Virus record (IMG/VR): IMGVR_UViG_3300017991_000048 | Location: 248,001-312,000 of that record | Length of the DNA: 64,000 bases | Reading direction: 5' to 3' (one strand) | Shown: positions 1,888 through 62,219 of the stretch, piece by piece | Layout of the letters: each line of letters opens with the position of its first letter | Numbering within the stretch: the stretch's first letter is position 1 | Made by a program: the position numbers and the translations under genes | Notes under the pieces: model-generated | What the model was told of the DNA's origin: nothing | Seen by the model: the letters and a program-made list of their open reading frames with translations, nothing else | The model's database searches: none

Positions 1888-1900
1888 ATCTACCTCAGTC

Positions 1901-2653
1901 TCAAAATGATGTCTTTTCCCAGTCGCGGCCCCAGTCACGTCCCGTAAACTCGCCTGTCTCTGCGCTCAACTCTACCTGTACTTCCCACTCATCACCTTCG
2001 TAAGTGGTTCCAGTCACCACTATGGACTGTTGTTTATCCCCTCTAACTCCATAATCATCGGTGCGGACATCCTCAAAATCTTCAGGCATTCCAATACTTT
2101 CTTCAACTTGTTTTGTCTCGCCTGAGAACTGATTCATCATTTCGACTCTAAGCTCTACTATGCCAGAATGAACATCAGCATCAACATCGTAAATATACCA
2201 AATGTGCCCAATATGACCGCCTCTTGGGATAAACTTGTGACGGATCTTACCGGTGGGCTTTCCAGTCTTATAAGTTTTTAGCCAACGTTGCACCGTTTCG
2301 TTGTATATGTCATTCACATCTTCTTGATCTCCGGGAATTTGTTTCCTGGCAGCGGTTCTGACGTCATCTTCCAGGTACTTGAAAACATCAATATAAGGCT
2401 GGACCTTTGAGGACATTACGACATCCCAAACCCCCATCGCAGCATACCTATCCCAAAAATCCCTCTGTTTGAGTTCTCTTTCGACCAAGTTTGCCGCTTT
2501 ACGAGGATCAAGCCCTTCAACATCATGTAATAAATCCATTGCTTGACTCATGCCCATAGGCGTGTTGTCGAAAGCGCCTGTTTTACCTAGAGCTTCTTCA
2601 AAAGCTGATCGGGGGTTGTTTATGGCGTTTTCAAAGGCTTTTCTGGGATTCAT
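1901..2653 (-). CDS. Hypothetical protein with tandem NPRKAFE/NPRSAFEEALGKTG leaders
   Basis: 250-aa ORF with SD; leader shared with many genes in the window. Confidence 0.75.
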   Translation of the reverse strand: MNPRKAFENAINNPRSAFEEALGKTGAFDNTPMGMSQAMDLLHDVEGLDPRKAANLVERELKQRDFWDRYAAMGVWDVVMSSKVQPYIDVFKYLEDDVRTAARKQIPGDQEDVNDIYNETVQRWLKTYKTGKPTGKIRHKFIPRGGHIGHIWYIYDVDADVHSGIVELRVEMMNQFSGETKQVEESIGMPEDFEDVRTDDYGVRGDKQQSIVVTGTTYEGDEWEVQVELSAETGEFTGRDWGRDWEKTSF

Positions 2654-2674
2654 TTTGCTCTCCGCTCCACAAAT

Positions 2675-3193: not shown

Positions 3194-3197
3194 TAGA

Positions 3198-3554
3198 CTA
3201 CAACGGGAAAATCTCTCGGCTCATCTGGTCGGCGTACTCGTCAGGGTCGCCAAACTCTTTGACAAACTTTCTTTCCGCGTCCGCTAGTTGGCCAAAGGTC
3301 TTCATGGACACACGCTCCAACTCCTTCACAGCACCTTTGATCATCCTAATCATAGCCTCAGCATCCCTTCTAGCTGGACGGTCTAGGTAGGACGCGGCAT
3401 TATCATAGGGCCTTACTGTCCCCATAAGAGCATCTTCAATGTCATGTATATCGTTCCACACTTTATCGAGCACCCGCCCTACAGGGCCTTCTGTAAGGAT
3501 TGCTTTTCTCTTGATGGCACTCTCAAATGCTTTTCTGGGGTTGCTCATGATCAA
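3198..3554 (-). CDS. Hypothetical protein with NPRKAFESAIKRKA leader
   Basis: 118-aa ORF with GGAG SD. Confidence 0.7.
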   Translation of the reverse strand: MIMSNPRKAFESAIKRKAILTEGPVGRVLDKVWNDIHDIEDALMGTVRPYDNAASYLDRPARRDAEAMIRMIKGAVKELERVSMKTFGQLADAERKFVKEFGDPDEYADQMSREIFPL

Positions 3555-3651
3555 TCTCCAAACAAAACGCCAATACGGTAAACCCTATACAGACTAGAAC
3601 GCAGGTTTCAACCAATAGCTAACCTCCGACTCACCGTTTCACGTGAAACAC

Positions 3652-3966: not shown

Positions 3967-4000
3967 TATGATACCCTCACTCGTTGGAGAACAACACCTC

Positions 4001-15683: not shown

Positions 15684-15905
15684 TTAATAGATTTTGACAC
15701 CGTTACCCATTACAATTAGACGGTAATCGGACCCAAACGCCTTTTTTAACTCCCACTCCAGAGCTTCCACTTCACGCAAGACCTCATCGAACTCTTCATC
15801 CAATAGAGGCTTTTGAGGGGGATGTGTACGCTCTCTGACCTTATTAATTCTTCGGAGAGTGGGCACATATGCTGTCTTGGACGTGCGTTTGTATGAATAA
15901 TCCAT
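15684..15905 (-). CDS. Small protein with YSYKRTSKTA leader
   Basis: 73 aa, AAGGAG SD. Confidence 0.65.
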   Translation of the reverse strand: MDYSYKRTSKTAYVPTLRRINKVRERTHPPQKPLLDEEFDEVLREVEALEWELKKAFGSDYRLIVMGNGVKIY

Positions 15906-17367: not shown

Positions 17368-18619
17368 TGTCTATACCGCTTGATAAAAACTCCACCACCC
17401 TCGTTCTAACCGCATCCGAATCGGTCTTGACTTCTGACTCCCATACCACGAGGCAGTCTATGCCAATGTCTCGGAAAGCTTCTACTAGCTCGTTTTCGTG
17501 TTCAAAACTGGAACGACCTGTAAACATTCGAGAATGCCAAAAGTCACCGAAAACCTCTACAACCTTACGGACCCCACGTTTGGGTTGTTTTGGATCGGGT
17601 CCAGCGAGGATAAAATCTGGGTTCTTATGATGTTTGAGCTTAGGTAACCACCGCCAAAAAGCCCCATTACCGACATAGAGCAACTCAGGGTTTAGAGAGG
17701 CAAAACGCCGTTCCAACTTATTCTGCTTCCGAGTGATTCCAGCAGCAACTAAAGCCTTATACGCGATAGCGGGTACTTTCATCGGGTGTGGCACTCCGTA
17801 CTGTTTCATAAATACCGCTCGCAGCTTCCTCTTCCCCTCTTCTGAAGCAAAAAAATGGTCACCGTAACGTTCGATCATTGTCTCAAGTTGTTGCTGACGT
17901 AAAACAAAACTCTGACCCGTCCATTCAACACCCCAATGTTCAAGATTAGTCTGTCGAGCCTTTTCGACAATTTCGGGCGAGCAAGATGGGGCCACACCCC
18001 CATAACGTTCTTGGTTCGTTGTCTCTATCTTTAGTCGGACAATCGGAGACGCCAAAGTTTCTTCTGTACCATAACGCTCAAGATTGGTTGCTTTAGTTTT
18101 AGCTCTAACCTCTGGGGATTGGCTTGGGTTCTCCACCCCGTACTTATCAAGATTGGTCTCTCGGATTTTTGCTTGAGTTTCAGGCCATGCAAAAGGATTA
18201 TCTTGGCCTTTGAGAACAGGGCGCTTGCCCTCAAGAGAAGATTGGACTTTCTCAAAAAGAACTGACTCTTTTGAAAACACATTTTCCGCACCGTAACGTT
18301 CTTTACAAGTCTCTTTCCGACGTTCCTCGGCTTCTTCAATATAACAAGGATTTGTAATCCCTTCCCCGTGAGTAGATTGAAGAGTTTCAGCTAGCCGTGC
18401 CATTTGCACTGCGCCTCGATCACGGTTTTTCCATGTGTCACACCTTTGGCGATGTCGCTTCATTTGTGTCAGCGACGTAGCCTCGTGCCCACATAGACAA
18501 GGGCGCGGCTTTGTATTGCCCAGTTTCTCTTTCCAACCGGCACAAACGGACTTATGCCGAGAATTGATACTATCGGAGTTAGGGAAATGAGTTTGACAAT
18601 AAGGACAGGTGGTAGGCAT
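17360..18619 (-). CDS. Putative free-standing homing endonuclease (Zn fingers, TNLxxYGVEN repeats, Vsr/DUF559-like nuclease)
   Basis: CPYC...HKSVC, CLC...HRQRC, repeats KERYGAEN/TNLDKYGVEN/TNLERYG, C-terminal PDFIL...EVFGDFWH...LVVWESE; likely start ATG 18619 (ORF track starts at 18637). Confidence 0.75.
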   Translation of the reverse strand: MPTTCPYCQTHFPNSDSINSRHKSVCAGWKEKLGNTKPRPCLCGHEATSLTQMKRHRQRCDTWKNRDRGAVQMARLAETLQSTHGEGITNPCYIEEAEERRKETCKERYGAENVFSKESVLFEKVQSSLEGKRPVLKGQDNPFAWPETQAKIRETNLDKYGVENPSQSPEVRAKTKATNLERYGTEETLASPIVRLKIETTNQERYGGVAPSCSPEIVEKARQTNLEHWGVEWTGQSFVLRQQQLETMIERYGDHFFASEEGKRKLRAVFMKQYGVPHPMKVPAIAYKALVAAGITRKQNKLERRFASLNPELLYVGNGAFWRWLPKLKHHKNPDFILAGPDPKQPKRGVRKVVEVFGDFWHSRMFTGRSSFEHENELVEAFRDIGIDCLVVWESEVKTDSDAVRTRVVEFLSSGIDND

Positions 18620-18625
18620 TTGTAA

Positions 18626-18653
18626 ATAATAACACAAACGCCAAATATGTCAA
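18626..18653 (-). promoter_or_regulatory. Sigma70-type promoter of the endonuclease gene (probably leaderless mRNA)
   Basis: TTGACA (18653-18648), 16 nt, TG-n-TATTAT (18631-18626), ATG 6 nt downstream, no SD. Confidence 0.6.
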
Positions 18654-18685: not shown

Positions 18686-19606
18686 CTAAAAGCCCAAAAA
18701 TTTCCTGGGTGACAGAACGCCCCGACCGGTGTACGGCCCAAAACTCGACCTGATTCCCATACCAAACCGGGGCTGCTGCAACCCCTTGACCACATTGACC
18801 GTGAGCTTCGCTTTCTCAAGTTGCTTATCGAATTGATCAGACGCCCCTTGGTATGCACCCTCGTACTTACTGGATTTCTCCATATCCAGTGAGATGCCGC
18901 CGATCGAATAGTTGAATTCATCGGCAATCCAGTTCAAACGCAAAGCGTTCAGAGCATGAAGCATAGCCCCTGTAAGTAACATGGTTCGCCATTCTGGAAA
19001 CTGTGCAACCATCTGATCAATGGTCGAAAAAGGCGTCCGTGGAGGAGACGCTGAAATCATATCCAAAGACCTCAAAAGGTACTCTTGAAGCTCAATGTCT
19101 TCCCAAATATATCCAAATACCCGGCTGAACTGCTGAATTGTGACCTCATGCGTCGGGGGTCTGAAATGGTAGTTTCTATCCGGGTTATTGTCCCTCAAAA
19201 GTATCCGCAACCGGCCCATCAGATCCAGTTCAACAGTTGTAGCGGTCGGCGCTCCCCCGGTAATCATCGTGGCACTTGCGGTAGACAGACCGGCCTTATC
19301 CGTTACAGAAAATTCTTGAACTACCTGCTGTACCGGTGCGCCGACAAGCTCCCGGAAAGTCCACCTGATCCTGTAGTCCCCAAGATTAGCGTCCAGGGGA
19401 ACAACGATGGAAGCATAATATTCACCTACGGAGGGGTTAGCCGGTGTCCGTTCTGGCAGTCCCACCAAAACCTCTTGCCCGGTCGTAAAATCATACAAGG
19501 CAAACGAGATTTCAGCAGCATCAACAGGCACGTTGGAAGCATTGACCAGATAGATATTCAGGTCATTACGCCCAAGTTGCTGCCCTCTGTAGAAAGTAGT
19601 TCCCAT
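18686..19606 (-). CDS. Putative head-tail connector (neck 1) with N-terminal Ig-like domain
   Basis: Ig-like N-domain (GEYYASIV...GDYRIRWTF) resembling the C-domain of 24436..25191; helical C-domain YSIGGISLDMEKSSKY; position before the head-closure gene. Confidence 0.45.
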   Translation of the reverse strand: MGTTFYRGQQLGRNDLNIYLVNASNVPVDAAEISFALYDFTTGQEVLVGLPERTPANPSVGEYYASIVVPLDANLGDYRIRWTFRELVGAPVQQVVQEFSVTDKAGLSTASATMITGGAPTATTVELDLMGRLRILLRDNNPDRNYHFRPPTHEVTIQQFSRVFGYIWEDIELQEYLLRSLDMISASPPRTPFSTIDQMVAQFPEWRTMLLTGAMLHALNALRLNWIADEFNYSIGGISLDMEKSSKYEGAYQGASDQFDKQLEKAKLTVNVVKGLQQPRFGMGIRSSFGPYTGRGVLSPRKFLGF

Positions 19607-19773: not shown

Positions 19774-19959
19774 TCAGATAAAGGCCCAAAACTGACCCTC
19801 GATTTCTTTAGAATTCCGCTTGGTAAGCTTGACCTCTTTTATCGTTGGGCGGCCTGATCGAGACCTCGTTTCAAGCTTTAATGTTCTAGGCTTTGCGTCG
19901 GCGGCTTTGGCAAGAGCCTCTTCAAATGCTTTCCTTGGATTTCCCATGAAACACCTCAA
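19774..19959 (-). CDS. Small protein with NPRKAFEEALAKAA leader; probably continues by frameshift to 19629
   Basis: 61-aa ORF; the +1 frame after TTTT at 19788-19791 is open for 52 more codons. Confidence 0.55.
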   Translation of the reverse strand: MRCFMGNPRKAFEEALAKAADAKPRTLKLETRSRSGRPTIKEVKLTKRNSKEIEGQFWAFI

Positions 19960-20939
19960 ACCCGTAACTGCTTATTGATAAATTCCATTTCTTCCCGTGA
20001 GAGCTTTGCCCGGTCGCCTCGCTCTATCCACAAACTATACTGAGTGCGTTCCCCGGAAGAATAATCTTGTTCATCTTCACTAATAAGCCAATCGTGTGCC
20101 GGGTTGGGGTGGCTTGACGACCACTCTATCCAACTTTTATAGCTCACATCACTATCATCTAAAAGCTCTTCCAGGGTGTCAAACTTTTCACTTTTACGGA
20201 TAAGCCAGCCTCTGTCATCGGTATCGCCAGCTTCGATAGCCTCTTCGTCCCATGTCTCATAGGTCATCTTGAAGTAATAACCCTTCCACTGACGAGCTAG
20301 CTTTGGATCTCTAAGTTCTAACTGCTCTAAATCGTCATCGTCAAGAACAATGATATCCGCTGTATTAACCGCTGTTTTTTCCAAGGCTTCTTCAAATGCT
20401 TTTCTTGGGTTTGTCATTGCTGTCTTACCTTTCTCACGCTGCTCCCATAATTCTGCGTGAGTATCATAAAGATCGGCGCTCAATTCATCAAGATCGCCGC
20501 CTCTAGCCCCATAAGAAGTAGCCATGTTTTGTACCTCTATCGCAACGTCGGCAAAATACTCAAACATATCCATTGCATCTTTTTTCTGAACGGCCCTACT
20601 GAAGTTATTAACAGCCTTTGCCAAATCACGTAACGCACGATCACCGCTCCCGCTGTGCCACTCATAATCCCACGGGGACTCCGACGCTCTGTAAAGATCA
20701 TCCACTACTTTACTGGTTATATTAGTGTTCCTCCACCCAATAGCTTTCAAAGCCATCGTACAGCTATCCGCAATGTCACTCAGAAGTCTCAGCCCTTTTT
20801 CTGTGTCTACTGGGCCACCTAGCTCTTTAACCTCTTTCTCCATCTCCCGCGCCCACCTCGCCAACTGCGACCAATTAATATCTCGGTCGCTGGACACTTT
20901 GGAAAGAGCTTTTTCAAATGCTTTACGCGGGTTCGTCAT
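19956..20939 (-). CDS. Two-module protein, each module starting with MTNPRKAFE
   Basis: N-terminal MTNPRKAFEKALSKVS; internal KTA-MTNPRKAFEEALEKTA (ATG at 20417). Confidence 0.8.
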   Translation of the reverse strand: MTNPRKAFEKALSKVSSDRDINWSQLARWAREMEKEVKELGGPVDTEKGLRLLSDIADSCTMALKAIGWRNTNITSKVVDDLYRASESPWDYEWHSGSGDRALRDLAKAVNNFSRAVQKKDAMDMFEYFADVAIEVQNMATSYGARGGDLDELSADLYDTHAELWEQREKGKTAMTNPRKAFEEALEKTAVNTADIIVLDDDDLEQLELRDPKLARQWKGYYFKMTYETWDEEAIEAGDTDDRGWLIRKSEKFDTLEELLDDSDVSYKSWIEWSSSHPNPAHDWLISEDEQDYSSGERTQYSLWIERGDRAKLSREEMEFINKQLRV

Positions 20940-20948
20940 TACAGTCTC

Positions 20949-23900
20949 CTAGTCCTCTTCTAAAACTCGCTGCTTGATATGATCCTTCGCATCTTTATCG
21001 AGATCTTCCCAATCAACGCCCTTACCCAAATGCTTACCTTCTTTGGCTTCACCCCACTGCGAGATGCTGCCACCGCCGCGACCCGCTCCAAACCCAAGTG
21101 ACATCTTGTAGCCAGGGTTAACGCTCGCGTCCCAGTCTTTACCGTCTACGATAACGGTGTACCGATCCGCCGTTTCTCCCCCATTATCATACACACGGAT
21201 CTTTGTGCCCTTCGCCAGTTCATGTGTCTTGGGCTTGCCTCTTCGGGTCTTCTTGGCCTTGGGTTTCTCTTCCTTAGGCTTTTCCTCCTTCTTATCCTCG
21301 CCTACGGCACTATACTCGCCCTTCTTTAGATCATCACCCCAGACATGAAAAGTCATATCTTCGGGCATTCTCTTTTCTTCGGGATTATTAGGATTTACAA
21401 AATGCCCTTCAAACCCTGGAGAAGGCTTGCCCTTGACTTTGGTCACACGGACGACATTAACTGTCCCACGCTCTTTGTTCTCTTGAACCAGAAGCTGTCC
21501 GTCTTTTACATCCTCCAACTTTGTAACGGGGTTGCCTTTCTTCAGCGAACCCAAACCAGAGCCTTTGCCCTTGGGTTGGTCGTCAGCTTTTCCTTTTTCC
21601 TTGGGCTTGCCCTCTTCTTTAACCTTGGAAGGCTCCTGCTTTTTTACAGTATGCCTCTTGGGGTCAGCCTTGGGGTGCTTTTGCAAGTACTTTTTCCGAG
21701 CCTCCTCTGTCGGGAATACAATAGCCGTTTTTTCGATGGCTTCTCTTACAATTTGTGTGAAGCTTGTCTCGGAAGCGCTCTTATGTAAGGCCATCCATGT
21801 ATCGTGTGAGTTTTCTGCCCTCATGCCCTCGAAGACAAGGTTATCTTTGAGAGCCTGTCTAAGATTCCTGTTTATAATTCTAAGAGCCTCATCAGGGCCT
21901 ATCTTGCCCATTTCCAAATGAATCAAAGCGTAAACAATGTCTTGCCCCGCTCCAACAATATAGTCAGCGCCACGGGTATGCCCCATCGCAAAACCCCAAC
22001 GTTCTAAAACTTCAGGGTCCATTATCCGCCTGGATCTTACATCTCGTTCAAGATCCTTCAAAAGCGTGTACGGACCAGCAGCGGCTGCTTTTCCAAGACC
22101 CAAGGCTTGCTCAAAAGCCTCTCTCGGATTGAATGCCGTCTTCTCAGGCCCACGCCAGAATGTGGTGCCTTCAATCCTGTCTTTCAGCGCAGCACAGAAA
22201 GCTCCGGTGTCAGATACCTTACCCTCCATCTTCTTCATGCACTTCTTGACATCACCGCCTACAGACTTCCAGAACTTCTTACGACTCTCGTCAGTCCAGC
22301 CCTTCGGCATTTTTTCCCACTTATCGGCAAAGACTTCCGATGCAGCAATCTTATCTACCCTTAAATCGATCATCTTCTTGGCACACGGAAGACAAATGTC
22401 AGCCACCTCTTCCGCCGTCAGGTAGAAATCCTCCTGGTCGTCTCGGACCTTGCCCAGAGCCTCTTCAAATGCTTTTCTCGGATTACCCATGGATGTCTCC
22501 TTTGCCTTCCCAAGCTCTGTCCTGGCTGTCTTGCCAAAGGATGCCCTCTTGTGTATTGCCCATTCTCGCACTCTACTTCTCTCAAGCTTGTCAAGTATTT
22601 CATCTACTTTATTATACAACCAAGGAGTTGGTCTTGTGTACCGAGCACCAACTTGCCCCTTTGCAGGTGCCAACAAAACTCCCTTTGGTCCAGCGTTCAA
22701 AGCGATATCCGCAGCTTGGAATATCCCTTGAGCAGCGCTTAATCCTAAATCATAAGGAGGGACTCGAAGATCCCTTACATGGCGGACTTCATTATTAATA
22801 ATCTTGGTTGTTATCTCTTCCGCCAACTCTGACATAAGTTTGGAAATTTTCAGTGTCTCTTCAAACGCCACTCGCGGGTTGGAAGAGGCTTGTTTTTCGC
22901 TGTATGTTGCCAGACTTACCGTATGCATCAGGTGTTCATAAGGCGCTTTCAAGTCTTTGGCTCGATGCTCGTAACCGTATCCAGCCATAGGAGCCAAAGG
23001 GTCATCCTTGGGCTTTTTGCCCTCGTCTTTTTCCGGTTTTTTGGGCTTCTCTTCCGGTTTCTTCTTCTCTGGCCCGGATAGTTGCCGTAATTGTTTCACT
23101 AAACTATCACGAAGCTTTTCATCTTCTTTATTATCCGCTGGAAGCCCCTCAAATTCTTTTGCTGCCTCTTCAAGCCGTTTATGAGGAAAAGCCTTTCCAG
23201 CCGACAAATGAGAACCAACTTCATTGATGGCAGGTGTTCCAGGTCCCTGCCACTGTTGGATTTCACCGCCTAAGTCCTTGTGCTTTTGGGAGGGTTCAAA
23301 CTTTTTGTCCGTAGGTTCCTCTTTTTTGACCGTATGTTTCTTGGGGTCGGCTTTGGGGTGCTCCTGGAGATACTTTTTCCGGGCCTCTTCCGTTGGGAAC
23401 TCCATGGCTAGTCTTACAGCCTCTGCAAACACAGAGGCTTCCTTCTGAGGCTTTAGAGCCTTGATCCTCTGTTGGAGTTCTTCAACATTACGTTTCATTC
23501 TCTTGATGTCCTTCTGAAGCTCTGCCTTTTCCTTCTTGGTAGCTTTCTCTAACCTCTCGCTGTCTTCACTGATTGCCTTTTCGATCTTCTTGATCTGGTC
23601 TTCAAGCCGAGCTACTTGGTACTCCTTTTCCCGCTTCGGACGCTTTCTAACTTCTTTCTTCTCAACAGTGTGGTGACTGGGGTCGGCTTTGGGATGCTCT
23701 CTGAGGTACTTATTCCGAGCCTTCTGGGAAGGATGGACCTTGGCCGTCAAAACTTGCTCAAACGCCTCAACAGCTAACTTTGAAATCATCCGCTTTTTAT
23801 TACGGATCACTTCCTCAAGACCCTTTACCACGGACTGGGCTCCCGATAGTGTCAGGTTTTCAACCTCTTTACCAGCCTTCAGGTCAGTGACGGCCTTACG

Positions 23901-23990
23901 CATTTCCGCAAGATTCTTCTCATCTCGCTTCAGAGCGGCTTCCCACTCAGACTTGGAAATTTCCAAAGCTACTTTTTCCCGTGTTATCAT
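20949..23990 (-). CDS. 1013-aa lysine-rich multi-module protein with internal leader motifs
   Basis: Internal NPRVAFEE, MGNPRKAFEEALGK, NPREAFEQAL; three HPKADPxxHTV modules; many K/R-x-A sites. Confidence 0.85.
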   Translation of the reverse strand: MITREKVALEISKSEWEAALKRDEKNLAEMRKAVTDLKAGKEVENLTLSGAQSVVKGLEEVIRNKKRMISKLAVEAFEQVLTAKVHPSQKARNKYLREHPKADPSHHTVEKKEVRKRPKREKEYQVARLEDQIKKIEKAISEDSERLEKATKKEKAELQKDIKRMKRNVEELQQRIKALKPQKEASVFAEAVRLAMEFPTEEARKKYLQEHPKADPKKHTVKKEEPTDKKFEPSQKHKDLGGEIQQWQGPGTPAINEVGSHLSAGKAFPHKRLEEAAKEFEGLPADNKEDEKLRDSLVKQLRQLSGPEKKKPEEKPKKPEKDEGKKPKDDPLAPMAGYGYEHRAKDLKAPYEHLMHTVSLATYSEKQASSNPRVAFEETLKISKLMSELAEEITTKIINNEVRHVRDLRVPPYDLGLSAAQGIFQAADIALNAGPKGVLLAPAKGQVGARYTRPTPWLYNKVDEILDKLERSRVREWAIHKRASFGKTARTELGKAKETSMGNPRKAFEEALGKVRDDQEDFYLTAEEVADICLPCAKKMIDLRVDKIAASEVFADKWEKMPKGWTDESRKKFWKSVGGDVKKCMKKMEGKVSDTGAFCAALKDRIEGTTFWRGPEKTAFNPREAFEQALGLGKAAAAGPYTLLKDLERDVRSRRIMDPEVLERWGFAMGHTRGADYIVGAGQDIVYALIHLEMGKIGPDEALRIINRNLRQALKDNLVFEGMRAENSHDTWMALHKSASETSFTQIVREAIEKTAIVFPTEEARKKYLQKHPKADPKRHTVKKQEPSKVKEEGKPKEKGKADDQPKGKGSGLGSLKKGNPVTKLEDVKDGQLLVQENKERGTVNVVRVTKVKGKPSPGFEGHFVNPNNPEEKRMPEDMTFHVWGDDLKKGEYSAVGEDKKEEKPKEEKPKAKKTRRGKPKTHELAKGTKIRVYDNGGETADRYTVIVDGKDWDASVNPGYKMSLGFGAGRGGGSISQWGEAKEGKHLGKGVDWEDLDKDAKDHIKQRVLEED

Positions 23991-23993
23991 TGT

Positions 23994-24452
23994 CTACCTC
24001 GCGCTCAACCCTACATCCTGTTGTTGCCACTCAATGGCTTTCAAAAGCTTCTCCGCTCTCGGTGCAAAAGCTGTCTTGAGTTTCCGCAAGCTGTCTCCGT
24101 AATCCCCCGTCTTGAGGTCGAAATCTCGGTTGAATTTTCTCATCACAGCGTTGTTATTATTCCTTACCTCTGACCAAGGCCCTAAAGTCTGAAAAAGTAT
24201 ACTCATGGTTCTTGGGGTTATCTCAATATAAAAACGTCCTGTCTTGCTTCTAAGGTCTGTGCTCCAGACATCATAATCTCTGCTCCAACCCGCAACATCG
24301 ACCTTCCAATCATGTCCTAACTTTCGCGCCACATCCTCTACTGTTACTTTAAATCTGTCGTGTAAGCTTATACCTTCAGTAAATTCTTCATCGTAATAAA
24401 AGCCCGTCTTGGCTTGATAACGATCAACTACCCTGTCATTCATCCCAACCAT
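23994..24452 (-). CDS. Hypothetical protein with RVVDRYQAKTG leader
   Basis: 152 aa; probable start ATG 24443. Confidence 0.7.
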   Translation of the reverse strand: MVGMNDRVVDRYQAKTGFYYDEEFTEGISLHDRFKVTVEDVARKLGHDWKVDVAGWSRDYDVWSTDLRSKTGRFYIEITPRTMSILFQTLGPWSEVRNNNNAVMRKFNRDFDLKTGDYGDSLRKLKTAFAPRAEKLLKAIEWQQQDVGLSAR

Positions 24453-25191
24453 ATTTACAATACCGCTCCAGGGTGTCGCCCGTTACAGGGCACGAAATTG
24501 CGTCCAGAACCTGGAAATAACAATCCTCTTCCACTACAGGATCATTATAGGTTCTTTGATAACACCAGCGGACCATCCAAAGCCCCGGCTGGCCGCATTC
24601 CCCGGCTGTCCCGGTTACGTAATAACAGCCAAGTTTATGCTTGGCTGGTCGCTGGTTGCCCGGTCCTATTTGCTCCAGGGCACATCCGGGCTGCATCTGG
24701 TACATTGTGTAGCCTACGGCCTCAGGGTCGTAAGGTTTGCCACTGCCATCTATGACCGAATAAATCAGGTCGCCCCATGTAAATATATGACCCCACCGGA
24801 AACCCACCGATACTACCGGAGCCTCGCAAATTGGCGGCGGAACATGGACAACATCCATGTAGGCTGTAACAACGGCAACCCCATAAATTGGGTCGTATTC
24901 CGAGAAATTCAGATGCCCCTCACCGTGGGTCTGACCCCGAACACCGACTCTCCGGAGCAAATCGGCTGTAACATTGCTCCCGCCGTCAGCTATGCCAGCG
25001 ATATCAGCTATGCTGTCATCGATCAAATCCCCCGCTCCGGTCACATGACCAGAGACATAAAAGACCCCGATTGTACTCCCGCCTACATTTGCTGCCCCAA
25101 CAATGGGATCAACGATATTATGAATCAGCGTAACCGAGCCGTTTACGCTCGCTGCACCTGTCGTTGTTCCGTCAATGTCATAAAGAGGCAT
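24436..25191 (-). CDS. Putative minor virion protein: Gly/Ala/Val beta-repeats plus Ig-like domain
   Basis: GAANVGG/GIADGG-type repeats; C-domain (FRWGHIF..GDL...GCYYV...GLWMVRWCY) similar to the N-domain of 18686..19606. Confidence 0.55.
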   Translation of the reverse strand: MPLYDIDGTTTGAASVNGSVTLIHNIVDPIVGAANVGGSTIGVFYVSGHVTGAGDLIDDSIADIAGIADGGSNVTADLLRRVGVRGQTHGEGHLNFSEYDPIYGVAVVTAYMDVVHVPPPICEAPVVSVGFRWGHIFTWGDLIYSVIDGSGKPYDPEAVGYTMYQMQPGCALEQIGPGNQRPAKHKLGCYYVTGTAGECGQPGLWMVRWCYQRTYNDPVVEEDCYFQVLDAISCPVTGDTLERYCKYGWDE

Positions 25192-25203
25192 TCCATCTCG
25201 ATC

Positions 25204-25476
25204 CTACAACTTATTTACGCTGGCCTTTAACTTAGCCGGGGTGAAATGGCCTTTATTATCAGCCCATACAATGTGGATAACATTGTTTTCGCCCACACCT
25301 ATAAAAAGGCCCATTGCCCCTCCGACAGCCGTAACTAAGGTTCCCGCAGTAATATCCCCCTGGCCTTTATACCTCTTGACCCCTTGCTGTTTGGCAAGTT
25401 GCTTGTCGAGAGTGTCCTTCAGTCCTGCGACTTTCTGAGCGCCCAGAGCCTGTTCAAATGCTTTACGAGGGTTCAT
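25204..25476 (-). CDS. Small protein with NPRKAFEQALGAQKVA leader
   Basis: 90-aa ORF, GGAG SD. Confidence 0.7.
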   Translation of the reverse strand: MNPRKAFEQALGAQKVAGLKDTLDKQLAKQQGVKRYKGQGDITAGTLVTAVGGAMGLFIGVGENNVIHIVWADNKGHFTPAKLKASVNKL

Positions 25477-25490
25477 GCCAAACTCCTATT

Positions 25491-25874
25491 CTAAATAATG
25501 CCGAAAACAAGCATCCAGGACGGAGCCCCATCTGGCCCGATGCCGTCCGGTTCAACTCTTTTGCCAGTAACGGACTTGGCAACACCGTCAAACATCCACT
25601 TCTCCATTACTCTTATCGACGGAGGTCTGGAAATACCAGAGACGTAGTTATGTAAATTTTCCGTGTGTACGGTGACCATATTACCAGCATCGTCCGTGAG
25701 TTCCGTTCGGGCTCCTGAACGACCGGGCCAACTCAAACTAACCCTGGACCCGCTCTCAATCGAATCGCCTCTTTTGTTCGCAACGTCTCTTTTAAGCCTG
25801 TAAGAACGGGCCTCAACGATTCTTTCGTGGGCCTGTTTGTTTATGGCTTCTTCAAATGCTTTACGAGGGTTCAT
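25491..25874 (-). CDS. Protein with NPRKAFEEAINKQA leader
   Basis: 127-aa ORF. Confidence 0.7.
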   Translation of the reverse strand: MNPRKAFEEAINKQAHERIVEARSYRLKRDVANKRGDSIESGSRVSLSWPGRSGARTELTDDAGNMVTVHTENLHNYVSGISRPPSIRVMEKWMFDGVAKSVTGKRVEPDGIGPDGAPSWMLVFGII

Positions 25875-25875
25875 T

Positions 25876-26259
25876 TTAGGTCTCCTGGACTATCAGTTGT
25901 CCTGCGGGGAATCTAACTTGATCTGAGGCCAGAATCAGCCGTGGTGTGCTCAGAGTGCCGTAATACATCATGTTACCACCGGCACTCGCATCCAAAAGAG
26001 CAAAAGCCTCGATGGTTCCCCACGTTGCCGTGGCAACCGGGAACAGTATCTCGCCCGTGTTTGACGACTGTCCGTTAACAGGGACCGTGACCGTCACTAA
26101 CTGCCGCCCATACCCGCCACCAGAAACCTCAGTGCCACCACCAGCAGGGGTGGGAGTCGCTGTATAGAGCGCCACGTAAACCAGCGCGGGAGACGTATAC
26201 GGGGTGTTCCGGAGAGCCGCGTTTACGAAGTTGTCACTGAGATAATATGTCTTTGGCAT
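25876..26259 (-). CDS. Minor tail/fibre-associated protein, paralogue of 28063..28449
   Basis: VYVALYT..PT...GTEVSGGGYGRQ...FPVATATWGT...GNMMYYG pattern. Confidence 0.7.
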   Translation of the reverse strand: MPKTYYLSDNFVNAALRNTPYTSPALVYVALYTATPTPAGGGTEVSGGGYGRQLVTVTVPVNGQSSNTGEILFPVATATWGTIEAFALLDASAGGNMMYYGTLSTPRLILASDQVRFPAGQLIVQET

Positions 26260-26267
26260 TTAGACCC

Positions 26268-26894
26268 TCACATCCAGAATTTCTTATCCGATAGCTCCAC
26301 TCCCGGCATCCGTTGAGCTTTCGCTTTCAATACCTGTGCCTTGCCAGGACCGATTCGCCCTGACCAGCGGTAACCTATTCTTACGGTTCCAGAGTAATCT
26401 GTTCCGTTGCAGTTGAGCCTTCCGGGTCTCAAATCCGTAAAGTCTGGACCCACTACGAGAGCATTGGCAATTTTCCGGACAACCTTGACCGCATCATCTA
26501 TCCGCCGTTTCGCGTCGGCGGGGTCCATACCGGCAGACGCGATAGTTATGTTTGTCCAGAAGTAAGCGCCGTCTTTGTCCGCGTACATCACAACATCTGG
26601 AAAAGTCTCACCAAGAGTTATGGCTTGCTTTTTCAGGGTTTCTTCAAATGCTTTTCTGGGGTTAGCCGCCATGCCTTCGCTCTCCATTTTCTCAAGACGA
26701 GTATAATAATCAGACAATTCTGCAAGATGGTCTTTGGCTATCTCTTTTGCGATTGCCGGGTCGTCTGTGTGCTCCTTCTCAACCTCGATCCCCATCTCAA
26801 GTTGCTCTTTATCAAACTTGTCATCAGGGACATCAGTGTGCTTGCCCACGCCTTCTTTTTGTAACGCTTCTTCGTAAGCTCTGCGAGGGTCCAT
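26268..26894 (-). CDS. DUF5661-like domain protein with two leader motifs
   Basis: FDKEQLEMGIEVEKEHTDDPAIAKEIAKDHLAELSDYYTRL recalled as DUF5661; N-terminal DPRRAYEEAL and internal MAANPRKAFEETLKKQA. Confidence 0.7.
   Translation of the reverse strand: MDPRRAYEEALQKEGVGKHTDVPDDKFDKEQLEMGIEVEKEHTDDPAIAKEIAKDHLAELSDYYTRLEKMESEGMAANPRKAFEETLKKQAITLGETFPDVVMYADKDGAYFWTNITIASAGMDPADAKRRIDDAVKVVRKIANALVVGPDFTDLRPGRLNCNGTDYSGTVRIGYRWSGRIGPGKAQVLKAKAQRMPGVELSDKKFWM

Positions 26895-38111: not shown

Positions 38112-38112
<1 letters not shown>
37525..38112 (-). CDS. Putative fibre-associated protein with fibre-tip-like C-domain
   Basis: Shared N-domain with 36503..37525; C-domain resembles the collagen protein's C-terminal tip. 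Confidence 0.55.
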
Positions 38113-45556
<7,444 letters not shown>

Positions 45557-57833: not shown

Positions 57834-58712
57834 CTAAACACGAGTGACAACAATACGGGTCAATCCGCGAGGATTGAAGGCACCGATACCCAGGTTCTCA
57901 AAACAACTGAAACCAATTGTCCGAGCCTTTGGATCGTCAGCCGACAGAACAGTGATCTCGGTACGAACCGGGATACGACCGAACTGCTCAGGCTCACAGC
58001 AAACATACGCGAAGCCTGACGGAACCAGCCTGGATGTGATGATCTGAGCACCCCAAAGAACAGCCTGTAGGCCGGTCTTGAGCAGGGTAGCCTGACTCTC
58101 GATATCCAGAATGTCACGTCCGAACTTACGGATGTCAGCGTAATCCGTTGCATTCATGTAGATCCGCGCAACCCGAAGGTCATGCCTCTCTATTTCTGCA
58201 AAGGCGTCAGCCAGTACTGCCGGTGAAATCGGAGCTACCACCGGTACATCGGGATTGGTCTGCCCAGGCAGCGTGTCGAAACCTGAAACAGCAATGCTGT
58301 CCAGAATCGCGAATACACGCTCATCCTCAGCCGCCTGAATCTGAGCCTTGGCCAAATCCTGGGCACGTTCGATCAGATCGAAACGACGCTCCTTGATCTG
58401 GGTCAGGGGGATTTCAGGGTTCGAGGCAATCTCAAACAAGGGGAAGATCACGCGACGTGGCTTCTGAATGGCAAGAATATTCTCACCCTCTTCGCCCACG
58501 ACAAATGCGGTCACGTCCGGGTCCTTGTCGTAGATAGGCAGAGCACCATCGGGAAGCTGCTCGACCAGGAAGGTCTTACGACCGACTGCCGAGTAGTCAC
58601 GACGAAGACGGAGCGGCTGAATCATGGAAGCGGCGAGCTTCGCACGACCGGCTGCGGTCTTGATGTACTCAGAAATAACCTGCTGCTTGACTTGATTTGA
58701 TACTTGTCCCAT
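57834..58712 (-). CDS. Major capsid protein (HK97-like fold)
   Basis: 292 aa after protease, scaffold and decoration genes, followed by a strong terminator; FEIASNPEI...IERAQDLAKAQIQAAEDERVF backbone-helix pattern; N-terminal YIKTAA. Confidence 0.8.
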   Translation of the reverse strand: MGQVSNQVKQQVISEYIKTAAGRAKLAASMIQPLRLRRDYSAVGRKTFLVEQLPDGALPIYDKDPDVTAFVVGEEGENILAIQKPRRVIFPLFEIASNPEIPLTQIKERRFDLIERAQDLAKAQIQAAEDERVFAILDSIAVSGFDTLPGQTNPDVPVVAPISPAVLADAFAEIERHDLRVARIYMNATDYADIRKFGRDILDIESQATLLKTGLQAVLWGAQIITSRLVPSGFAYVCCEPEQFGRIPVRTEITVLSADDPKARTIGFSCFENLGIGAFNPRGLTRIVVTRV

Positions 58713-60710: not shown

Positions 60711-62219
60711 TTACGACCGTCCCAAGCTAAATAATCGGCCTTTTTCTAACAAACTGGCAGTTTCACTCCCTGTTAGCTTCCGACCAAGAACTTGACGACA
60801 AGCCGCCAAATATGACTCTACATCTTCATATGGGCCTGTTCCTCCTACATCAAGAACAGTCCTATAAACTCTTGTTTCACCAGCCATAAGTGCTTTCTTA
60901 TTCATTAAATCAAGCATTCGGGATACGGCCAAAATGTTCCGACCTGTAAATCCTGCCTTTTTAACTAATGGCCAACCACCACGCTTGTGTAAGATCAAGC
61001 CGTGAAAAACTTTCCTAGCATCTGCTTTTCCAATAAAAGAAACTACTAATTTAGCAATCCGCTGCCACTCAGGGTGCTTCATGGCGGATCGAATTAAAGT
61101 CTCATTTTGCTGATTAGGGTCTATAGCCCGGATGCTATCTACTTCTTTCTGACCGATTTCTTTTCTAATGTTTTCAATGGCTTGGTTACGCAGAGCATCT
61201 GTTAGATCAGTGATAGCTTTCTGAACCGGGTTCTCTTCTTCAGGTTCTGCTGGAGCCGTTTCTTCGCCTTCATCCTCAGTTTCAAACTGTTGTTCAGGCT
61301 CCTGTCCCTGTCCCTGGCTTTGCTCTTGCTGGCCCCATCCCTGGAAAGCCGCTCTGGACATCATGTTAGGATCAGCCACTGGAGCCGGTTGGCCCAAAGC
61401 TACTCGCATCTTACCTTCAAGCCCTTGAAGCTCTTCTGCCGTAAGAATATTTCTCAGAACAGCGCCCTTGAAAGCTGGATTGGCAACCCAAGATGCCTCG
61501 ATAAACTTTACGGAGTCAGGATCGGTATAATGGCCGCATAACTCCGCAATAATGCGTTCAACGCCAAGGTCATCCCTGAACTTGCTTCCTTTAAAGAACC
61601 GGACGCACTGACAGAGTTGTGCTTCATCCTGTGCTACATTTCCACACTTTGTACACGTTGTGGTAGCTGTAGAGCATCCCATGGATAGGGTGCCGAGCTT
61701 CCCGGTCTTGATAGCCCTAATCAGGGGCGCATGTTTAAGATCATTCGCAATCAGAATGTCAATGTATATGGATTCCCCGACATCCCTGGCAGCGGCGTCG
61801 ATAATCCGACCCTTAGAAAGCTCCGGAATCTGAACATGCTCAACGTAAGATTGCGCTCCGACAAAGGTCTTGAAACTTCCCAACAGGAGCCTTCGCTCGA
61901 AAGCATCGTTATTATTGTTAACGAACTGAGCGGTCTTGGGCGTAATGTAATAATCGCTATACTTACGATCAACCTCGAAACCCTCTACAAAATGCCGACC
62001 CATGGGAGCAGAAGCTTCGTCCACGTCCACGGAAGCCACAATCGTTGCGTGGCTGAGCATATATTTGGACGGGTCATACTCCTGAAGGATGATCCGGGCG
62101 GTCTTCTTCTGAAAATCCGGGGCAGGACTCAAGGCCCCACGACGCACAGCATCCCATTCCGCGAATTCAATTCCCGGTTTTTGTAAGGTTGCTTTTGCGT
62201 ATTTAAGAAATGCCATCAA
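60711..62219 (-). CDS. Putative prohead (maturation) protease, assemblin/HK97-like
   Basis: Candidate catalytic His (SYVEHVQ) and Ser (GTLSMGC), E.S.VANPAF strand, CxxC insert, position before the scaffold. Confidence 0.7.
   Translation of the reverse strand: MMAFLKYAKATLQKPGIEFAEWDAVRRGALSPAPDFQKKTARIILQEYDPSKYMLSHATIVASVDVDEASAPMGRHFVEGFEVDRKYSDYYITPKTAQFVNNNNDAFERRLLLGSFKTFVGAQSYVEHVQIPELSKGRIIDAAARDVGESIYIDILIANDLKHAPLIRAIKTGKLGTLSMGCSTATTTCTKCGNVAQDEAQLCQCVRFFKGSKFRDDLGVERIIAELCGHYTDPDSVKFIEASWVANPAFKGAVLRNILTAEELQGLEGKMRVALGQPAPVADPNMMSRAAFQGWGQQEQSQGQGQEPEQQFETEDEGEETAPAEPEEENPVQKAITDLTDALRNQAIENIRKEIGQKEVDSIRAIDPNQQNETLIRSAMKHPEWQRIAKLVVSFIGKADARKVFHGLILHKRGGWPLVKKAGFTGRNILAVSRMLDLMNKKALMAGETRVYRTVLDVGGTGPYEDVESYLAACRQVLGRKLTGSETASLLEKGRLFSLGRS

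What the first reader, a model, noticed from the sequence alone, without database searches (positions are those of the whole stretch)
19956..26894. Cargo polyproteins built from fused leader-bearing genes that retain their old start signals
Internal leaders keep their Met, and often an SD. In the 1013-aa gene, AAGGAGACATCC-ATG at 22490 precedes MGNPRKAFEEALGK. In the 327-aa gene, the ATG at 20417 follows KTA with AAGGT upstream. In the 208-aa gene, the ATG at 26672 follows GAAGGC. This looks like read-through fusion of once separate genes, or deliberate nested starts, giving strings of modules separated by K/R-x-A sites that the protease could split.
Basis: partly seen in the sequence, partly recalled or inferred. 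Interest (0 to 1): 0.62.

Follow-up and report, generated by a model that had tools for sequence, protein, structure and literature searches.

The report
Leader-tagged phage head-cargo gene fusions
A 398-kb phage related to Bacillus phage G puts the same 15-residue leader in front of about a dozen genes and repeats it inside three longer genes that are in-frame fusions of units found as separate genes in related phages, which suggests (unproven) that strings of head cargo proteins are loaded together and then cut apart.

Summary
The peptide [M-x]-NPRKAFEEAL-x-K-x-A occurs 13 times in the window and 15-17 times in the 398-kb genome, always on the coding strand. It starts 7 window ORFs and lies inside three: once in the 327-aa gene, three times in the 1013-aa gene, once in the 208-aa gene. 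The ATGs at 22490, 20417 and 26672 are correct.

The fusion reading is well supported. Four of the five modules behind internal leaders are stand-alone genes elsewhere, each beginning right after its own, often different, leader. The 22490 junction (AAG GAG ACA TCC ATG) has the layout of the real gene boundary 1013->327 (TAG GAG ACT GTA ATG). Shine-Dalgarno-like motifs precede internal leader Mets far more often than other internal ATGs. Leader copies differ at synonymous sites, so the peptide itself is under selection.

My best reading is T4-like capsid-targeting propeptides reiterated in fused cargo genes and removed by the prohead protease. Packaging, cleavage and internal initiation remain untested. 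I rate it a new variant of a known kind.

The parts
26268..26894 (-). 208-aa two-module gene: N-terminal leader + DUF5661, then an internal leader + module B
   Evidence: ORF. Residues 16-72 match Pfam DUF5661 at E 2.2e-14, 54 bits against a cut-off of 27. Module B is a stand-alone 127-aa gene with its own leader in G001 (L003 6133-6516, 56% identity).
26862..26891 (-). N-terminal leader DPRRAYEEAL of the 208-aa gene (ATG at 26894)
26634..26672 (-). Internal leader M-AA-NPRKAFEETL, followed by KKQA. The ATG is at 26672, preceded by GGAGAGCGAAGGC.
25491..25874 (-). 127-aa gene with N-terminal leader MNPRKAFEEAINKQA
   Evidence: 34.3 bits, the best leader score
25204..25476 (-). 90-aa gene with N-terminal leader MNPRKAFEQALGAQKVAG
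20949..23990 (-). 1013-aa multi-module gene. It has a degenerate leader near its N-terminus, three HPxAD repeat units each behind a leader-like helix, an internal type-3 tag, three canonical internal leaders, and a C-terminal domain.
   Evidence: The G001 homologue is 632 aa and shares only residues 5-85 and 496-630.
22851..22895 (-). Junction EKQA-SS-NPRVAFEETL (internal leader 1, no Met)
   Evidence: The junction K[QT]A-S-x-[ND]P is conserved in G001 although the downstream modules differ. An independent contig is identical across it.
22455..22507 (-). Junction AKETS-M-G-NPRKAFEEAL (internal leader 2), with AAGGAG 6 nt before the ATG at 22490
   Evidence: G001 has the same SD/ATG layout with non-homologous upstream sequence. 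Independent contigs are identical.
22131..22490 (-). Module M2 (CxxC ... PKGW ... CMKKM ... AFCAAL)
   Evidence: It is a stand-alone ORF of about 113-130 aa just upstream of the 306-aa gene in 8 more distant relatives, aligned from residue 17, i.e. after the leader. Its core matches the last ~45 residues of the Haloarcula virus HATV-3 portal protein.
22101..22142 (-). Junction EKTA-F-NPREAFEQAL (internal leader 3, no Met)
   Evidence: An independent contig is identical.
21765..22100 (-). Module M3 (AAGPYTLL ... WGFAMGHTRGADY ... SHDTW)
   Evidence: Stand-alone homologues P0006 (201 aa) and P0007 (129 aa) start the domain right after their own leader (…SKKTA|AAGPYTLL). They end where the next junction motif begins here.
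22962..22988 (-). Internal copy, Met retained, of a second N-terminal tag type (MAGYGYEHR; compare MYSYDHRKTA)
19956..20939 (-). 327-aa two-module gene: leader + helical module A, then an internal leader + module B
   Evidence: Module B has five stand-alone homologues of 129-209 aa, up to 72% identical, with other N-termini. In the AF2 model the leader helix and linker are low-confidence and the domain from about residue 45 is confident.
20370..20426 (-). Junction GKTA-M-T-NPRKAFEEAL-EKTA. The ATG is at 20417 and K-T-A lies on both sides of the leader.
20937..20951 (-). Real gene boundary TAG GAG ACT GTA ATG. The 1013-aa stop, an SD and the 327-aa start lie in the same frame, three codons apart.
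   Evidence: It is the template for the stop-loss model of the 22490 junction.
19774..19947 (-). 57-aa gene with N-terminal leader MGNPRKAFEEALAKAA (just outside the finding's range)
3198..3548 (-). 116-aa leader-bearing gene (MSNPRKAFESAIKRKA)
   Evidence: Homologues in L066 and L068 align from residue 19, after the leader, and carry another N-terminal tag.
1901..2653 (-). 250-aa gene with a tandem double leader (MNPRKAFENAIN-NPRSAFEEALGKTGA)
60711..62219 (-). Homologue of head maturation proteases
   Evidence: phrog_18299, E 2.5e-9. It is 39% identical (E 6e-39) to the annotated head maturation protease of Tunturiibacter phage Tunturi_5.
59467..60666 (-). Acidic, Q-rich scaffold-like protein with three K[TQ]A sites
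   Evidence: The sites are conserved or recurrent in 37 homologues of 45-67% identity.
57834..58712 (-). Major capsid protein
   Evidence: 40% identity to the major head protein gp27 of Bacillus phage G and 48% to that of Tunturi_5

Best explanation
The window belongs to a complete 398-kb phage of the Bacillus-phage-G lineage. About a dozen of its genes begin with one short amphipathic leader, NPRKAFEEAL-x-K-[T/Q]-[A/G]. I read this leader as the counterpart of the T4 capsid-targeting sequence (MKTYQEFIAE): a propeptide that brings otherwise unrelated proteins into the prohead and is then cut off by the prohead protease, most likely after K-[T/Q]-A.

The 208-, 327- and 1013-aa genes are in-frame fusions of such leader-plus-domain units. 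They probably arose by loss of a stop codon in the very short, sometimes in-frame, spacers between neighbouring leader genes. Each unit therefore still carries its Met and often its ribosome-binding site.

The fused product would enter the prohead as one chain with several targeting helices. The protease would then cut it at the K-[T/Q]-A sites on either side of the leaders into separate cargo domains.

Shown: the leader family, its selection at the peptide level, the modularity and fusion state, the retained start signals, and the enrichment and conservation of K-[T/Q]-A in head proteins.

Inferred: capsid targeting, cleavage, cargo status, and the direction of change (fusion rather than fission).
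For: 1. Leader family. There are 13 copies in the window and 15-17 in the genome, all in the coding frame. P2, R3, A5 and E7 are invariant.
2. Selection on the peptide. Codon identity between copies at identical residues averages only 0.48, so the conservation is not recent DNA duplication. Internal copies score as high as N-terminal ones: 26-34 bits against 23-34.
3. Stand-alone homologues. Four of the five modules behind internal leaders are separate genes elsewhere. 208_B is a 127-aa gene in G001. M2 is a small ORF in 8 relatives. 327_B has five stand-alone homologues. M3 has two. DUF5661 is a recognised autonomous domain family. A module of the G001 fusion starts one residue after its internal leader's ...EKQ; its stand-alone relative starts right after an N-terminal tag.
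4. Junction layout. AAG GAG ACA TCC ATG at 22490 matches the real boundary TAG GAG ACT GTA ATG at 20951-20937. G001 has the same SD-ATG layout with a different upstream module. SD-like motifs are enriched before internal leader Mets.
5. K[TQ]A enrichment. There are 42 observed against 10.5 +/- 3.3 expected in genes of genome 260-324 kb (0 of 1000 within-protein shuffles). The rest of the genome has 57 against 44. Six control tripeptides, including the reverse A[TQ]K, are not significantly enriched. The sites lie on one or both sides of the leaders. They are conserved or recurrent in hypervariable scaffold proteins. In P0007 the leader ends ...SKKTA and the conserved domain starts at the next residue.
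6. Head context. A protease homologue, a scaffold-like protein and the MCP lie in the window. The genes are interleaved with Gp80-type head-fibre genes. The M2 core forms the C-terminal tail of a portal protein in HATV-3. DUF5661 sits inside a DUF2213 protein between the terminase and capsid genes of Vibrio phage VPs20.
7. Precedent. T4 internal proteins carry a 10-19-residue propeptide that targets them to the core and is removed by gp21 (PMC9026906; 10.1101/2021.01.19.427310).
Against: There is no proteomic, structural or expression evidence; the phage is uncultured and comes from sediment metagenomes.

The protease assignment rests on homology to annotated proteases. Pfam gave no hit, and the AF2 model of the protease domain was unusable at pLDDT 39.5. 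Protease-leader docking gave no verdict.

Only 6 of 15 leaders end in strict K-[TQ]-[AG], although 10 of 15 have K-x-[A/G]. Two internal leaders are not preceded by K[TQ]A. The 260-324 kb region for the enrichment test was chosen after looking at the bins.

Related tag types also occur at C-termini in relatives. One sits on a CCA-adding enzyme. Both fit a non-cleaved docking tag, or a target other than the capsid, at least as well.

Fission of an ancestral polyprotein in the relatives is not formally excluded.
Confidence: 0.55

Rival explanations
1. The leader is a permanent docking helix, like an encapsulin cargo-loading peptide or a scaffold-binding helix, and is not a cleaved propeptide. 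Proteins with several copies are multivalent tethers that stay intact in the virion or in the assembly intermediate.
For: Related tags occur at C-termini as well as N-termini in relatives, and as tandem doubles. The G001 632-aa gene ends in a leader-like RMDFEEALRKAAR with nothing behind it. Internal copies are under peptide-level selection. The MCP is small and has no delta domain.
Against: This model does not explain why K-[T/Q]-A is fourfold enriched across head-region proteins and conserved in scaffold proteins. It also does not explain why the conserved domains of stand-alone homologues begin immediately after ...KTA. A protease homologue is encoded next to the scaffold and the MCP.
Confidence: 0.2
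2. The internal SD+ATG signals are functional. The fused genes are nested in-frame genes, as in lambda C/Nu3 or the T4 gp21 short form, and give both the long chain and shorter leader-bearing products. This can coexist with the best explanation.
For: SD-like motifs precede 5 of 6 internal leader Mets in three genomes, against 2.5-7% of other internal ATGs. AAGGAG-N6-ATG is kept in both G000 and G001, whose M2 modules are only about 72-75% identical. T4 gp21 has an essential internal start (PMC9026906).
Against: Two of the five internal leaders have neither Met nor SD. The 20417 site has only a weak AAGGT. The K-E codons AAG GAG give an SD by themselves in these Glu/Lys-rich proteins. Conservation of the 18-nt junction between G000 and G001 is not above the local background. 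Recent fusion explains the same data.
Confidence: 0.3
3. The tag directs proteins somewhere other than the capsid interior. Candidates are a tail or ejection apparatus, an intracellular assembly site, a chaperone, or a phage-encoded unfoldase/protease.
For: A second tag family (xxRVVxRYL) marks 13 ORFs, including a tRNA nucleotidyltransferase. Stand-alone homologues of 327_B lie among non-structural genes, next to a ClpX-like gene in L170. The leader genes at 1901-3548 lie beside tail-like DUF2460 genes.
Against: The main cluster is interleaved with head-fibre genes. Two modules are tied to portal and prohead proteins in other viruses. Packaged enzymes are normal for large phages, for example T4 Alt and N4 vRNAP (PMC5512222). 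Virion genes are scattered in jumbo phages.
Confidence: 0.12
4. The internal motifs are ordinary parts of single folded proteins or chance repeats, or the long ORFs are assembly artefacts.
For: None beyond the short motif length.
Against: There are 17 profile matches in one genome, all in the coding frame. Modules behind the motifs have stand-alone homologues whose ends coincide with the motif positions. The AF2 model separates the leader from the domain. The junctions are identical in contigs from independent samples, and a fused homologue exists in two further assemblies.
Confidence: 0.02

Closest known systems
Capsid targeting sequences (CTS) of phage T4 internal proteins IPI-III and Alt, removed by the prohead protease gp21
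   Same: Both are short (10-19 aa) N-terminal amphipathic peptides shared by otherwise unrelated proteins of one phage. Both are followed by a short conserved motif that could be the protease site. The layouts are alike: K-T-Y-Q-E-F-I in T4 against R-K-A-F-E-E-A-L here (10.1101/2021.01.19.427310; PMC9026906). The payloads vary between close relatives in both cases.
   Different: The tag here is reiterated inside long ORFs, with Met and SD retained. The candidate site is K-[T/Q]-A, not L/I-x-E. The protease is not detectably T4-gp21-like by Pfam. Several tag types coexist and are exchanged on homologous domains. Nothing has been shown experimentally.
N-terminal propeptides of head and ejection proteins in phiKZ-like giant phages (SPN3US gp245, motif A-X-E)
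   Same: Both are giant-phage heads with many internal proteins processed at a short motif. That motif also occurs repeatedly in propeptides and scaffold-like proteins (PMC10052503).
   Different: Those propeptides are mostly long (111-254 aa) and are not a shared short tag. No strings of leader-plus-domain units have been reported. The phage lineage and the motif are different.
Polyvalent proteins of phages and conjugative elements (Iyer et al. 2017, PMC5512222)
   Same: Both are large mosaic multi-domain proteins encoded with virion genes. Both are proposed to be packaged, injected and sometimes processed, and their domain content differs between close relatives.
   Different: None of the signature domains (MuF, ART, MPTase, PBECR and others) was found. 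Polyvalent proteins are not described as having a reiterated targeting leader with retained start signals between their domains.
Nested in-frame head-assembly genes (lambda C/Nu3; T4 gp21 internal start)
   Same: Both have an in-frame internal ribosome-binding site and ATG inside a head-morphogenesis gene.
   Different: In those cases the nested product is a scaffold or protease fragment of a single gene, not a formerly independent cargo gene. Use of the internal starts here is untested.

Membership tests
T4-type capsid targeting sequence / prohead-protease propeptide | One short N-terminal peptide shared by several otherwise unrelated proteins of the same phage | tested here: met
   There are 15-17 copies on about 12 ORFs, and the downstream domains are unrelated to one another.
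T4-type capsid targeting sequence / prohead-protease propeptide | The peptide ends in the cleavage motif that the prohead protease also uses in scaffold and other head proteins | tested here: inconclusive
   K-x-[A/G] follows 10 of 15 leaders. K[TQ]A is fourfold enriched in head-region proteins and conserved in scaffolds. No cleavage data exist.
T4-type capsid targeting sequence / prohead-protease propeptide | The peptide is sufficient to bring a protein into the capsid, and the mature protein is in the virion | not testable with these tools
   The phage is uncultured. Docking of the leader to the protease gave no verdict.
T4-type capsid targeting sequence / prohead-protease propeptide | A prohead protease is encoded with the scaffold and the MCP | tested here: met
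   60711-62219 is homologous to annotated head maturation proteases and lies next to a scaffold-like gene and the MCP. The catalytic fold is not confirmed.
Polyvalent proteins (Iyer et al. 2017) | Two to 15 domains in one polypeptide, drawn from the recognised set of conflict domains (MuF, ART, peptidases, nucleases and others) | tested here: not met
   The proteins are multi-domain, but Pfam and PHROGs find only DUF5661 above cut-off and no signature domain.
Polyvalent proteins (Iyer et al. 2017) | Encoded among virion genes, with mosaic domain content between relatives | tested here: met
   The slot between the 251-aa and 306-aa gene homologues holds from 98 aa to about 1400 aa of different modules in relatives.
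Protease-processed polyprotein | One translation product cut into separate functional proteins | not testable with these tools
   Only sequence evidence exists: autonomous modules and K[TQ]A at the junctions.
Nested in-frame genes (lambda C/Nu3 type) | In-frame internal SD and start codon | tested here: met
   AAGGAG-N6-ATG at 22490 and GGAGA before 26672, enriched over background.
Nested in-frame genes (lambda C/Nu3 type) | The shorter product is made | not testable with these tools
   No RNA or ribosome data exist; no RNA run holds the sequence.
DUF5661 (PF18905) | Match above the Pfam gathering score | tested here: met
   Residues 16-72 of the 208-aa protein score 54 bits against a cut-off of 27.
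Phage-G-like huge phages | Major capsid protein and protease homologous to those of Bacillus phage G and its relatives | tested here: met
   The MCP is 40% identical to phage G gp27, 48% to Tunturi_5, and 84% to the uncultured 485-kb phage LR745208.1. The protease is homologous to that of Tunturi_5; the summary also counts two Bacillus records, which were not inspected.

The most novel reading that the evidence does not exclude
A whole clade of phage-G-like huge phages may load its heads through interchangeable short terminal tags. There are at least three types, each lineage-specific in sequence. Cargo genes would toggle between separate ORFs and in-frame strings by gain or loss of a single stop codon. 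Each unit would keep its own tag, its K-[T/Q]-A cleavage site and a working ribosome-binding site. One locus would then give both a polyprotein and nested single units. That would be a polycistron/polyprotein hybrid organisation not described for tailed phages, together with a new protease specificity.
Probability: 0.3. Interest if true: 0.78.

Novelty: new variant of a known kind. Interest (0 to 1): 0.62.

Why it matters
If the leader is a capsid-targeting propeptide, it gives a sequence-only way to list the packaged (probably ejected) proteins of an uncultured clade that has 581 IMG/VR contigs with a recognisable relative of its MCP (best 80 at 90% identity or more). It also predicts the protease specificity, K-[T/Q]-A.

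The fused genes show how phage cargo repertoires can grow. A stop codon between neighbouring leader genes is lost, and the result still works because each unit brings its own tag and cleavage sites.

The tag could also become a packaging handle for engineering in cultured relatives such as phage G and Tunturi_5, as the T4 CTS has been.

Tried and rejected
- **Docking.** Complex prediction of the protease N-domain (19-row alignment) with residues 1-45 of the 127-aa leader protein gave no verdict (score 0.00). It is evidence neither way.
- **Protease model.** The AF2 model of the protease domain had pLDDT 39.5 and was unusable, so it was not searched.
- **Fold search.** Foldseek of the 327_B model against the PDB found nothing at E <= 0.001.
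- **Atlas look-ups.** Searches with the 1013-aa C-terminal part and with 327_A gave no usable hit.
- **PDB sequence search.** The protease sequence matched nothing.
- **Related loci.** The search for related loci with the whole 327-aa protein and with M3 plus the C-terminal part found no close relatives in IMG/VR.
- **327_A.** The word search found no homologues.
- **Module M1.** M1 (residues 373-500) has no homologue in the fetched loci. No word search was left for it.
- **HPxAD repeat.** tblastn of the repeat unit against GenBank phages found nothing.
- **MCP N-terminus.** K-T-A in the MCP N-terminus is conserved, but the whole MCP is >=90% identical, so this says nothing.
- **Tripeptide counts on homologous head loci.** Shared ancestry inflates these counts, so I did not use them as a test.
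- **Stop-codon read-through or recoding.** Rejected: the genome has no suppressor tRNA and uses all three stops normally.
- **Frame of neighbouring leader genes.** I first thought three neighbouring pairs were in one frame. On checking, only 1013->327 is; 327->57 aa and 127->90 aa are not.
- **Literature.** A search for the leader sequence returned only unrelated nisin papers.
Full report
**What the window is.** The window is bases 248,001-312,000 of a single 398,071-bp virus record with direct terminal repeats, rated 100% complete. Nearly all window genes are on the minus strand.

- The 292-aa protein at 57834-58712 is the major capsid protein. It is 40% identical to gp27 of Bacillus phage G, 48% to Tunturiibacter phage Tunturi_5, and 84% to the uncultured 485-kb phage LR745208.1.
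- 581 IMG/VR stretches encode a relative of the MCP, and the 80 best are 90% identical or more.
- Upstream of the MCP lie a 212-aa gene and an acidic, Q-rich scaffold-like protein (59467-60666).
- Further upstream is a 502-aa homologue of annotated head maturation proteases at 60711-62219 (phrog_18299; 39% identity to the Tunturi_5 protease).
- The genome has 42 tRNAs, none a suppressor, and uses all three stop codons. The standard code therefore applies.
- The DNA comes from sediment metagenomes, and no RNA run holds it.

**The observation.** A six-frame scan finds [ND]PRxA[FY]ExxL 13 times in the window, always in the coding frame of minus-strand ORFs. Two more copies lie elsewhere in the genome. 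A profile built from the 13 copies gives 17 matches in this genome, 11 in the closest relative G001 (416 kb) and 6 in G002 (411 kb). It gives none in more distant relatives.

- Seven window ORFs start with the motif: 26894, 25874, 25476, 20939, 19947, 3548 and 2653. The last carries a tandem double.
- Five copies are internal: residue 177 of the 327-aa gene, residues 371, 503 and 621 of the 1013-aa gene, and residue 78 of the 208-aa gene.
- Three of the five internal copies keep a Met one to three residues before N-P-R, exactly like the N-terminal copies. The other two have F or SS instead.
- Contigs from independent samples reproduce the 22127, 22490 and 22877 junctions without a difference.
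- A fused homologue of the 1013-aa gene exists in two other assemblies.

**The leader is a selected peptide, not a DNA repeat.** Between copies, codons for identical residues agree only 48% of the time on average. Even so, P2, R3, A5 and E7 are invariant and N1 and F6 nearly so. Internal copies score 26-34 bits against the profile, the same range as N-terminal ones. The internal leaders are therefore not decaying relics.

**The modules are autonomous units.**

- *208_B* (residues 75-208) is a separate 127-aa gene with its own N-terminal leader in G001, at the same place in the gene order.
- *M2* (1013-aa residues 503-620) is a separate ORF of roughly 113-130 aa just upstream of the conserved 306-aa gene in eight more distant relatives. 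The alignment starts at residue 17, after the leader, and those ORFs begin with a different tag such as ...RVAHRYSGSKKVA.
- *327_B* has five stand-alone homologues of 129-209 aa, up to 72% identical, again with other N-termini. Its AF2 model has a confident alpha/beta domain from about residue 45. The leader helix and linker are low-confidence.
- *M3* (residues 621-742) has two stand-alone homologues. P0007 reads MDNQKVAKQLVKIAKELVGSKKTA|AAGPYTLL..., and both end just where the next junction motif (SFTQIVREAIEKTA) starts in the window gene.
- *208_A* is DUF5661, a Pfam family of its own.
- In G001 the homologue of the 1013-aa gene is 632 aa and shares only residues 5-85 and 496-630.
- One of the G001-specific modules begins one residue after its internal leader's ...EKQ. 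It aligns at E 1e-20 with residues 10-87 of a stand-alone 405-aa protein, immediately after that protein's N-terminal tag.
- No homologues were found for 327_A or M1.

**How the fusions probably arose.** The real boundary between the 1013-aa and 327-aa genes reads GAC TAG GAG ACT GTA ATG ACG AAC CCG. The stop codon, overlapping an AGGAG ribosome-binding site, lies three in-frame codons before the next start. The internal junction at 22490 reads GCA AAG GAG ACA TCC ATG GGT AAT CCG. That is the same layout with TAG replaced by AAG.

G001 has GCC AAG GAG GCG TCC ATG AGC AAC CCG at the orthologous junction, while the sequence upstream of it is unrelated. The unit therefore moved, or was kept, together with its translation-start region.

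SD-like 5-mers at -16..-5 precede 2.5% of internal ATGs genome-wide and 3 of 45 other internal ATGs in the cargo genes. They precede 2 of 3 internal leader Mets here and all 3 in G001 and G002.

Second copies in tandem double leaders have no Met. That fits local duplication rather than gene fusion for those copies. Among neighbouring leader genes only 1013->327 are in the same frame today.

**A candidate cleavage motif.** Most leaders end in K-x-[A/G] at positions 12-14 (10 of 15; strict K-[TQ]-[AG] in 6). Three of the five internal leaders are directly preceded by K-T-A or K-Q-A.

Within-protein shuffling was used as the control.

| Gene set | K[TQ]A observed | Expected | Shuffles reaching observed |
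|---|---|---|---|
| Genome 260-324 kb (head and neighbouring structural genes) | 42 | 10.5 +/- 3.3 | 0 of 1000 |
| Rest of the genome | 57 | 44.3 +/- 6.2 | 3 of 100 |

Six control tripeptides, including the reverse A[TQ]K, are not significantly enriched. Only about six of the 42 sites belong to leaders.

The scaffold-like protein has three sites. In 37 homologues of 45-67% identity the first site is almost invariant (DTFNHxE-KTA-S). [E/D/Q]-K-[Q/T]-A recurs within the hypervariable acidic stretch, and QKQA...RTAS is kept near the C-terminus.

The region was chosen after looking at 20-kb bins, so the exact P value is post hoc, but the effect is large. I take K-[T/Q]-A as the likely prohead-protease site. 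This is an inference.

**Head context of the payloads.** The leader genes are interleaved with two Gp80-type head-fibre genes (PF23140). The core of M2 matches the last ~45 residues of the HATV-3 portal protein. DUF5661 lies inside a DUF2213 protein between the terminase and capsid genes of Vibrio phage VPs20. No module has a recognisable enzymatic or anti-defence domain.

**The wider pattern.** The slot between the homologues of the 251-aa and 306-aa genes is hypervariable. It holds one 98-aa ORF in L006 and about 1400 aa in this phage. Other lineages carry their own junction motifs:

- AAEAFRxxL occurs five times in a 456-aa ORF of L035.
- NPKAAYDLLDQAY occurs twice in a 515-aa ORF of L023.
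- AF[RQ]HA[LV]TVRNV is at three N-termini in L011.
- An internal, Met-retaining copy of a type-2 tag lies in L009.

This genome also has a type-2 tag (xxRVVxRYL) at 13 N-termini, one C-terminus and only 8 internal places. It has a type-3 tag (MxYSYDHRKTA) at six N-termini. A Met-retaining type-3 copy lies inside the 1013-aa gene.

Homologous domains carry type 1 here and type 2 elsewhere, so the tags look interchangeable. An unrelated 462-kb phage (LR756500.1) starts at least four ORFs, one of them a DUF5661 protein, with MKFLKSYEEFLNE. That closely resembles the T4 CTS.

**Comparison with what is known.** The nearest precedent is the T4 capsid targeting sequence. It is a 10-19-residue N-terminal propeptide (MKTYQEFIAE in IPIII) that brings internal proteins to the scaffolding core and is removed by gp21. 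Variable payloads between relatives are seen as a way to diversify packaged proteins (10.1101/2021.01.19.427310; PMC9026906).

Giant phiKZ-like phages process many head proteins at A-X-E, mostly through long propeptides (PMC10052503). Polyvalent proteins are mosaic, packaged multi-domain proteins, but with other domains and without reiterated tags (PMC5512222). Nested in-frame starts are known from lambda C/Nu3 (my own knowledge) and T4 gp21 (PMC9026906).

I found no description of this leader. I know of no description of reiterated targeting leaders with retained start signals inside phage cargo genes. I therefore rate this a new variant of a known kind.

**Limits.** Nothing here shows that the proteins are packaged, that they are cut, or that the internal starts are used. 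The protease fold could not be modelled and the docking job gave no verdict. C-terminal tags in relatives and a tagged CCA-adding enzyme keep the non-cleaved docking-tag and other-destination rivals alive.

Noticed in passing
window 10033-11103 (-): A 356-aa protein matches the Volactin family of actin homologues (PF25216, E 6.7e-72), which I recall (not checked here) as described from haloarchaea. A phage-encoded actin in a phage-G-like huge phage.
   Followed up: no
window 12664-15297 (-): An 877-aa conserved structural-region gene carries an intein (Hint plus LAGLIDADG). The L008 homologue is 454 aa without it. Protease genes of some relatives are 920-945 aa and probably hold inteins as well.
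   Followed up: partly
window 288-1712, 2675-3193, 50933-51541 (-) and 10 further ORFs of the genome: A second N-terminal tag family, xxRVVxRY(F)L: 13 N-terminal, 1 C-terminal and 8 internal matches in 125,000 residues. It includes the tRNA nucleotidyltransferase. In relatives it also occurs at C-termini and on homologues of the type-1-tagged domains.
   Followed up: partly
window 52022-52651, 53699-54463, 15916-17367, 15684-15905 (-): A third N-terminal tag family, M(x)YSYD(H/R)R(K)TA, on six to eight ORFs. It ends in the same K/R-T-A.
   Followed up: partly
genome 92617-92693 (outside the window): A tRNA with a four-base anticodon (tccg), called by ARAGORN among 42 tRNAs; possibly a frameshift suppressor. 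No stop-codon suppressor tRNA is present.
   Followed up: no
L168 (LR756500.1, 462-kb uncultured phage) 688-7162: At least four ORFs begin with MKFLKSYEEFLNE-like peptides close to the T4 CTS MKTYQEFIAE. One of them is a DUF5661 protein.
   Followed up: no
window 38112-44915 (-) and 31573-36484 (-): A 2267-aa collagen-like fibre protein is followed by a cluster of glycosyltransferase- and methyltransferase-like genes.
   Followed up: no
window 17360-18637 (-): A homing endonuclease gene (phrog_3339) is inserted between the conserved 306-aa gene and the 483-aa gene.
   Followed up: no
window 23664-23735, 23328-23399, 21645-21716 (-): A 24-residue unit, [FH]P(T/S)xxARxKYLxxHPKADPxxHTV, occurs three times in the 1013-aa gene, each behind a leader-like helix. 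It is found as small separate ORFs or in other polyproteins in L006, L007, L011, L023 and L035. No family matches it.
   Followed up: partly
window 18686-19606 (-): A 306-aa protein of unknown function is conserved at 46-85% identity in 121 IMG/VR contigs and anchors the variable cargo slot. No family matches it.
   Followed up: no
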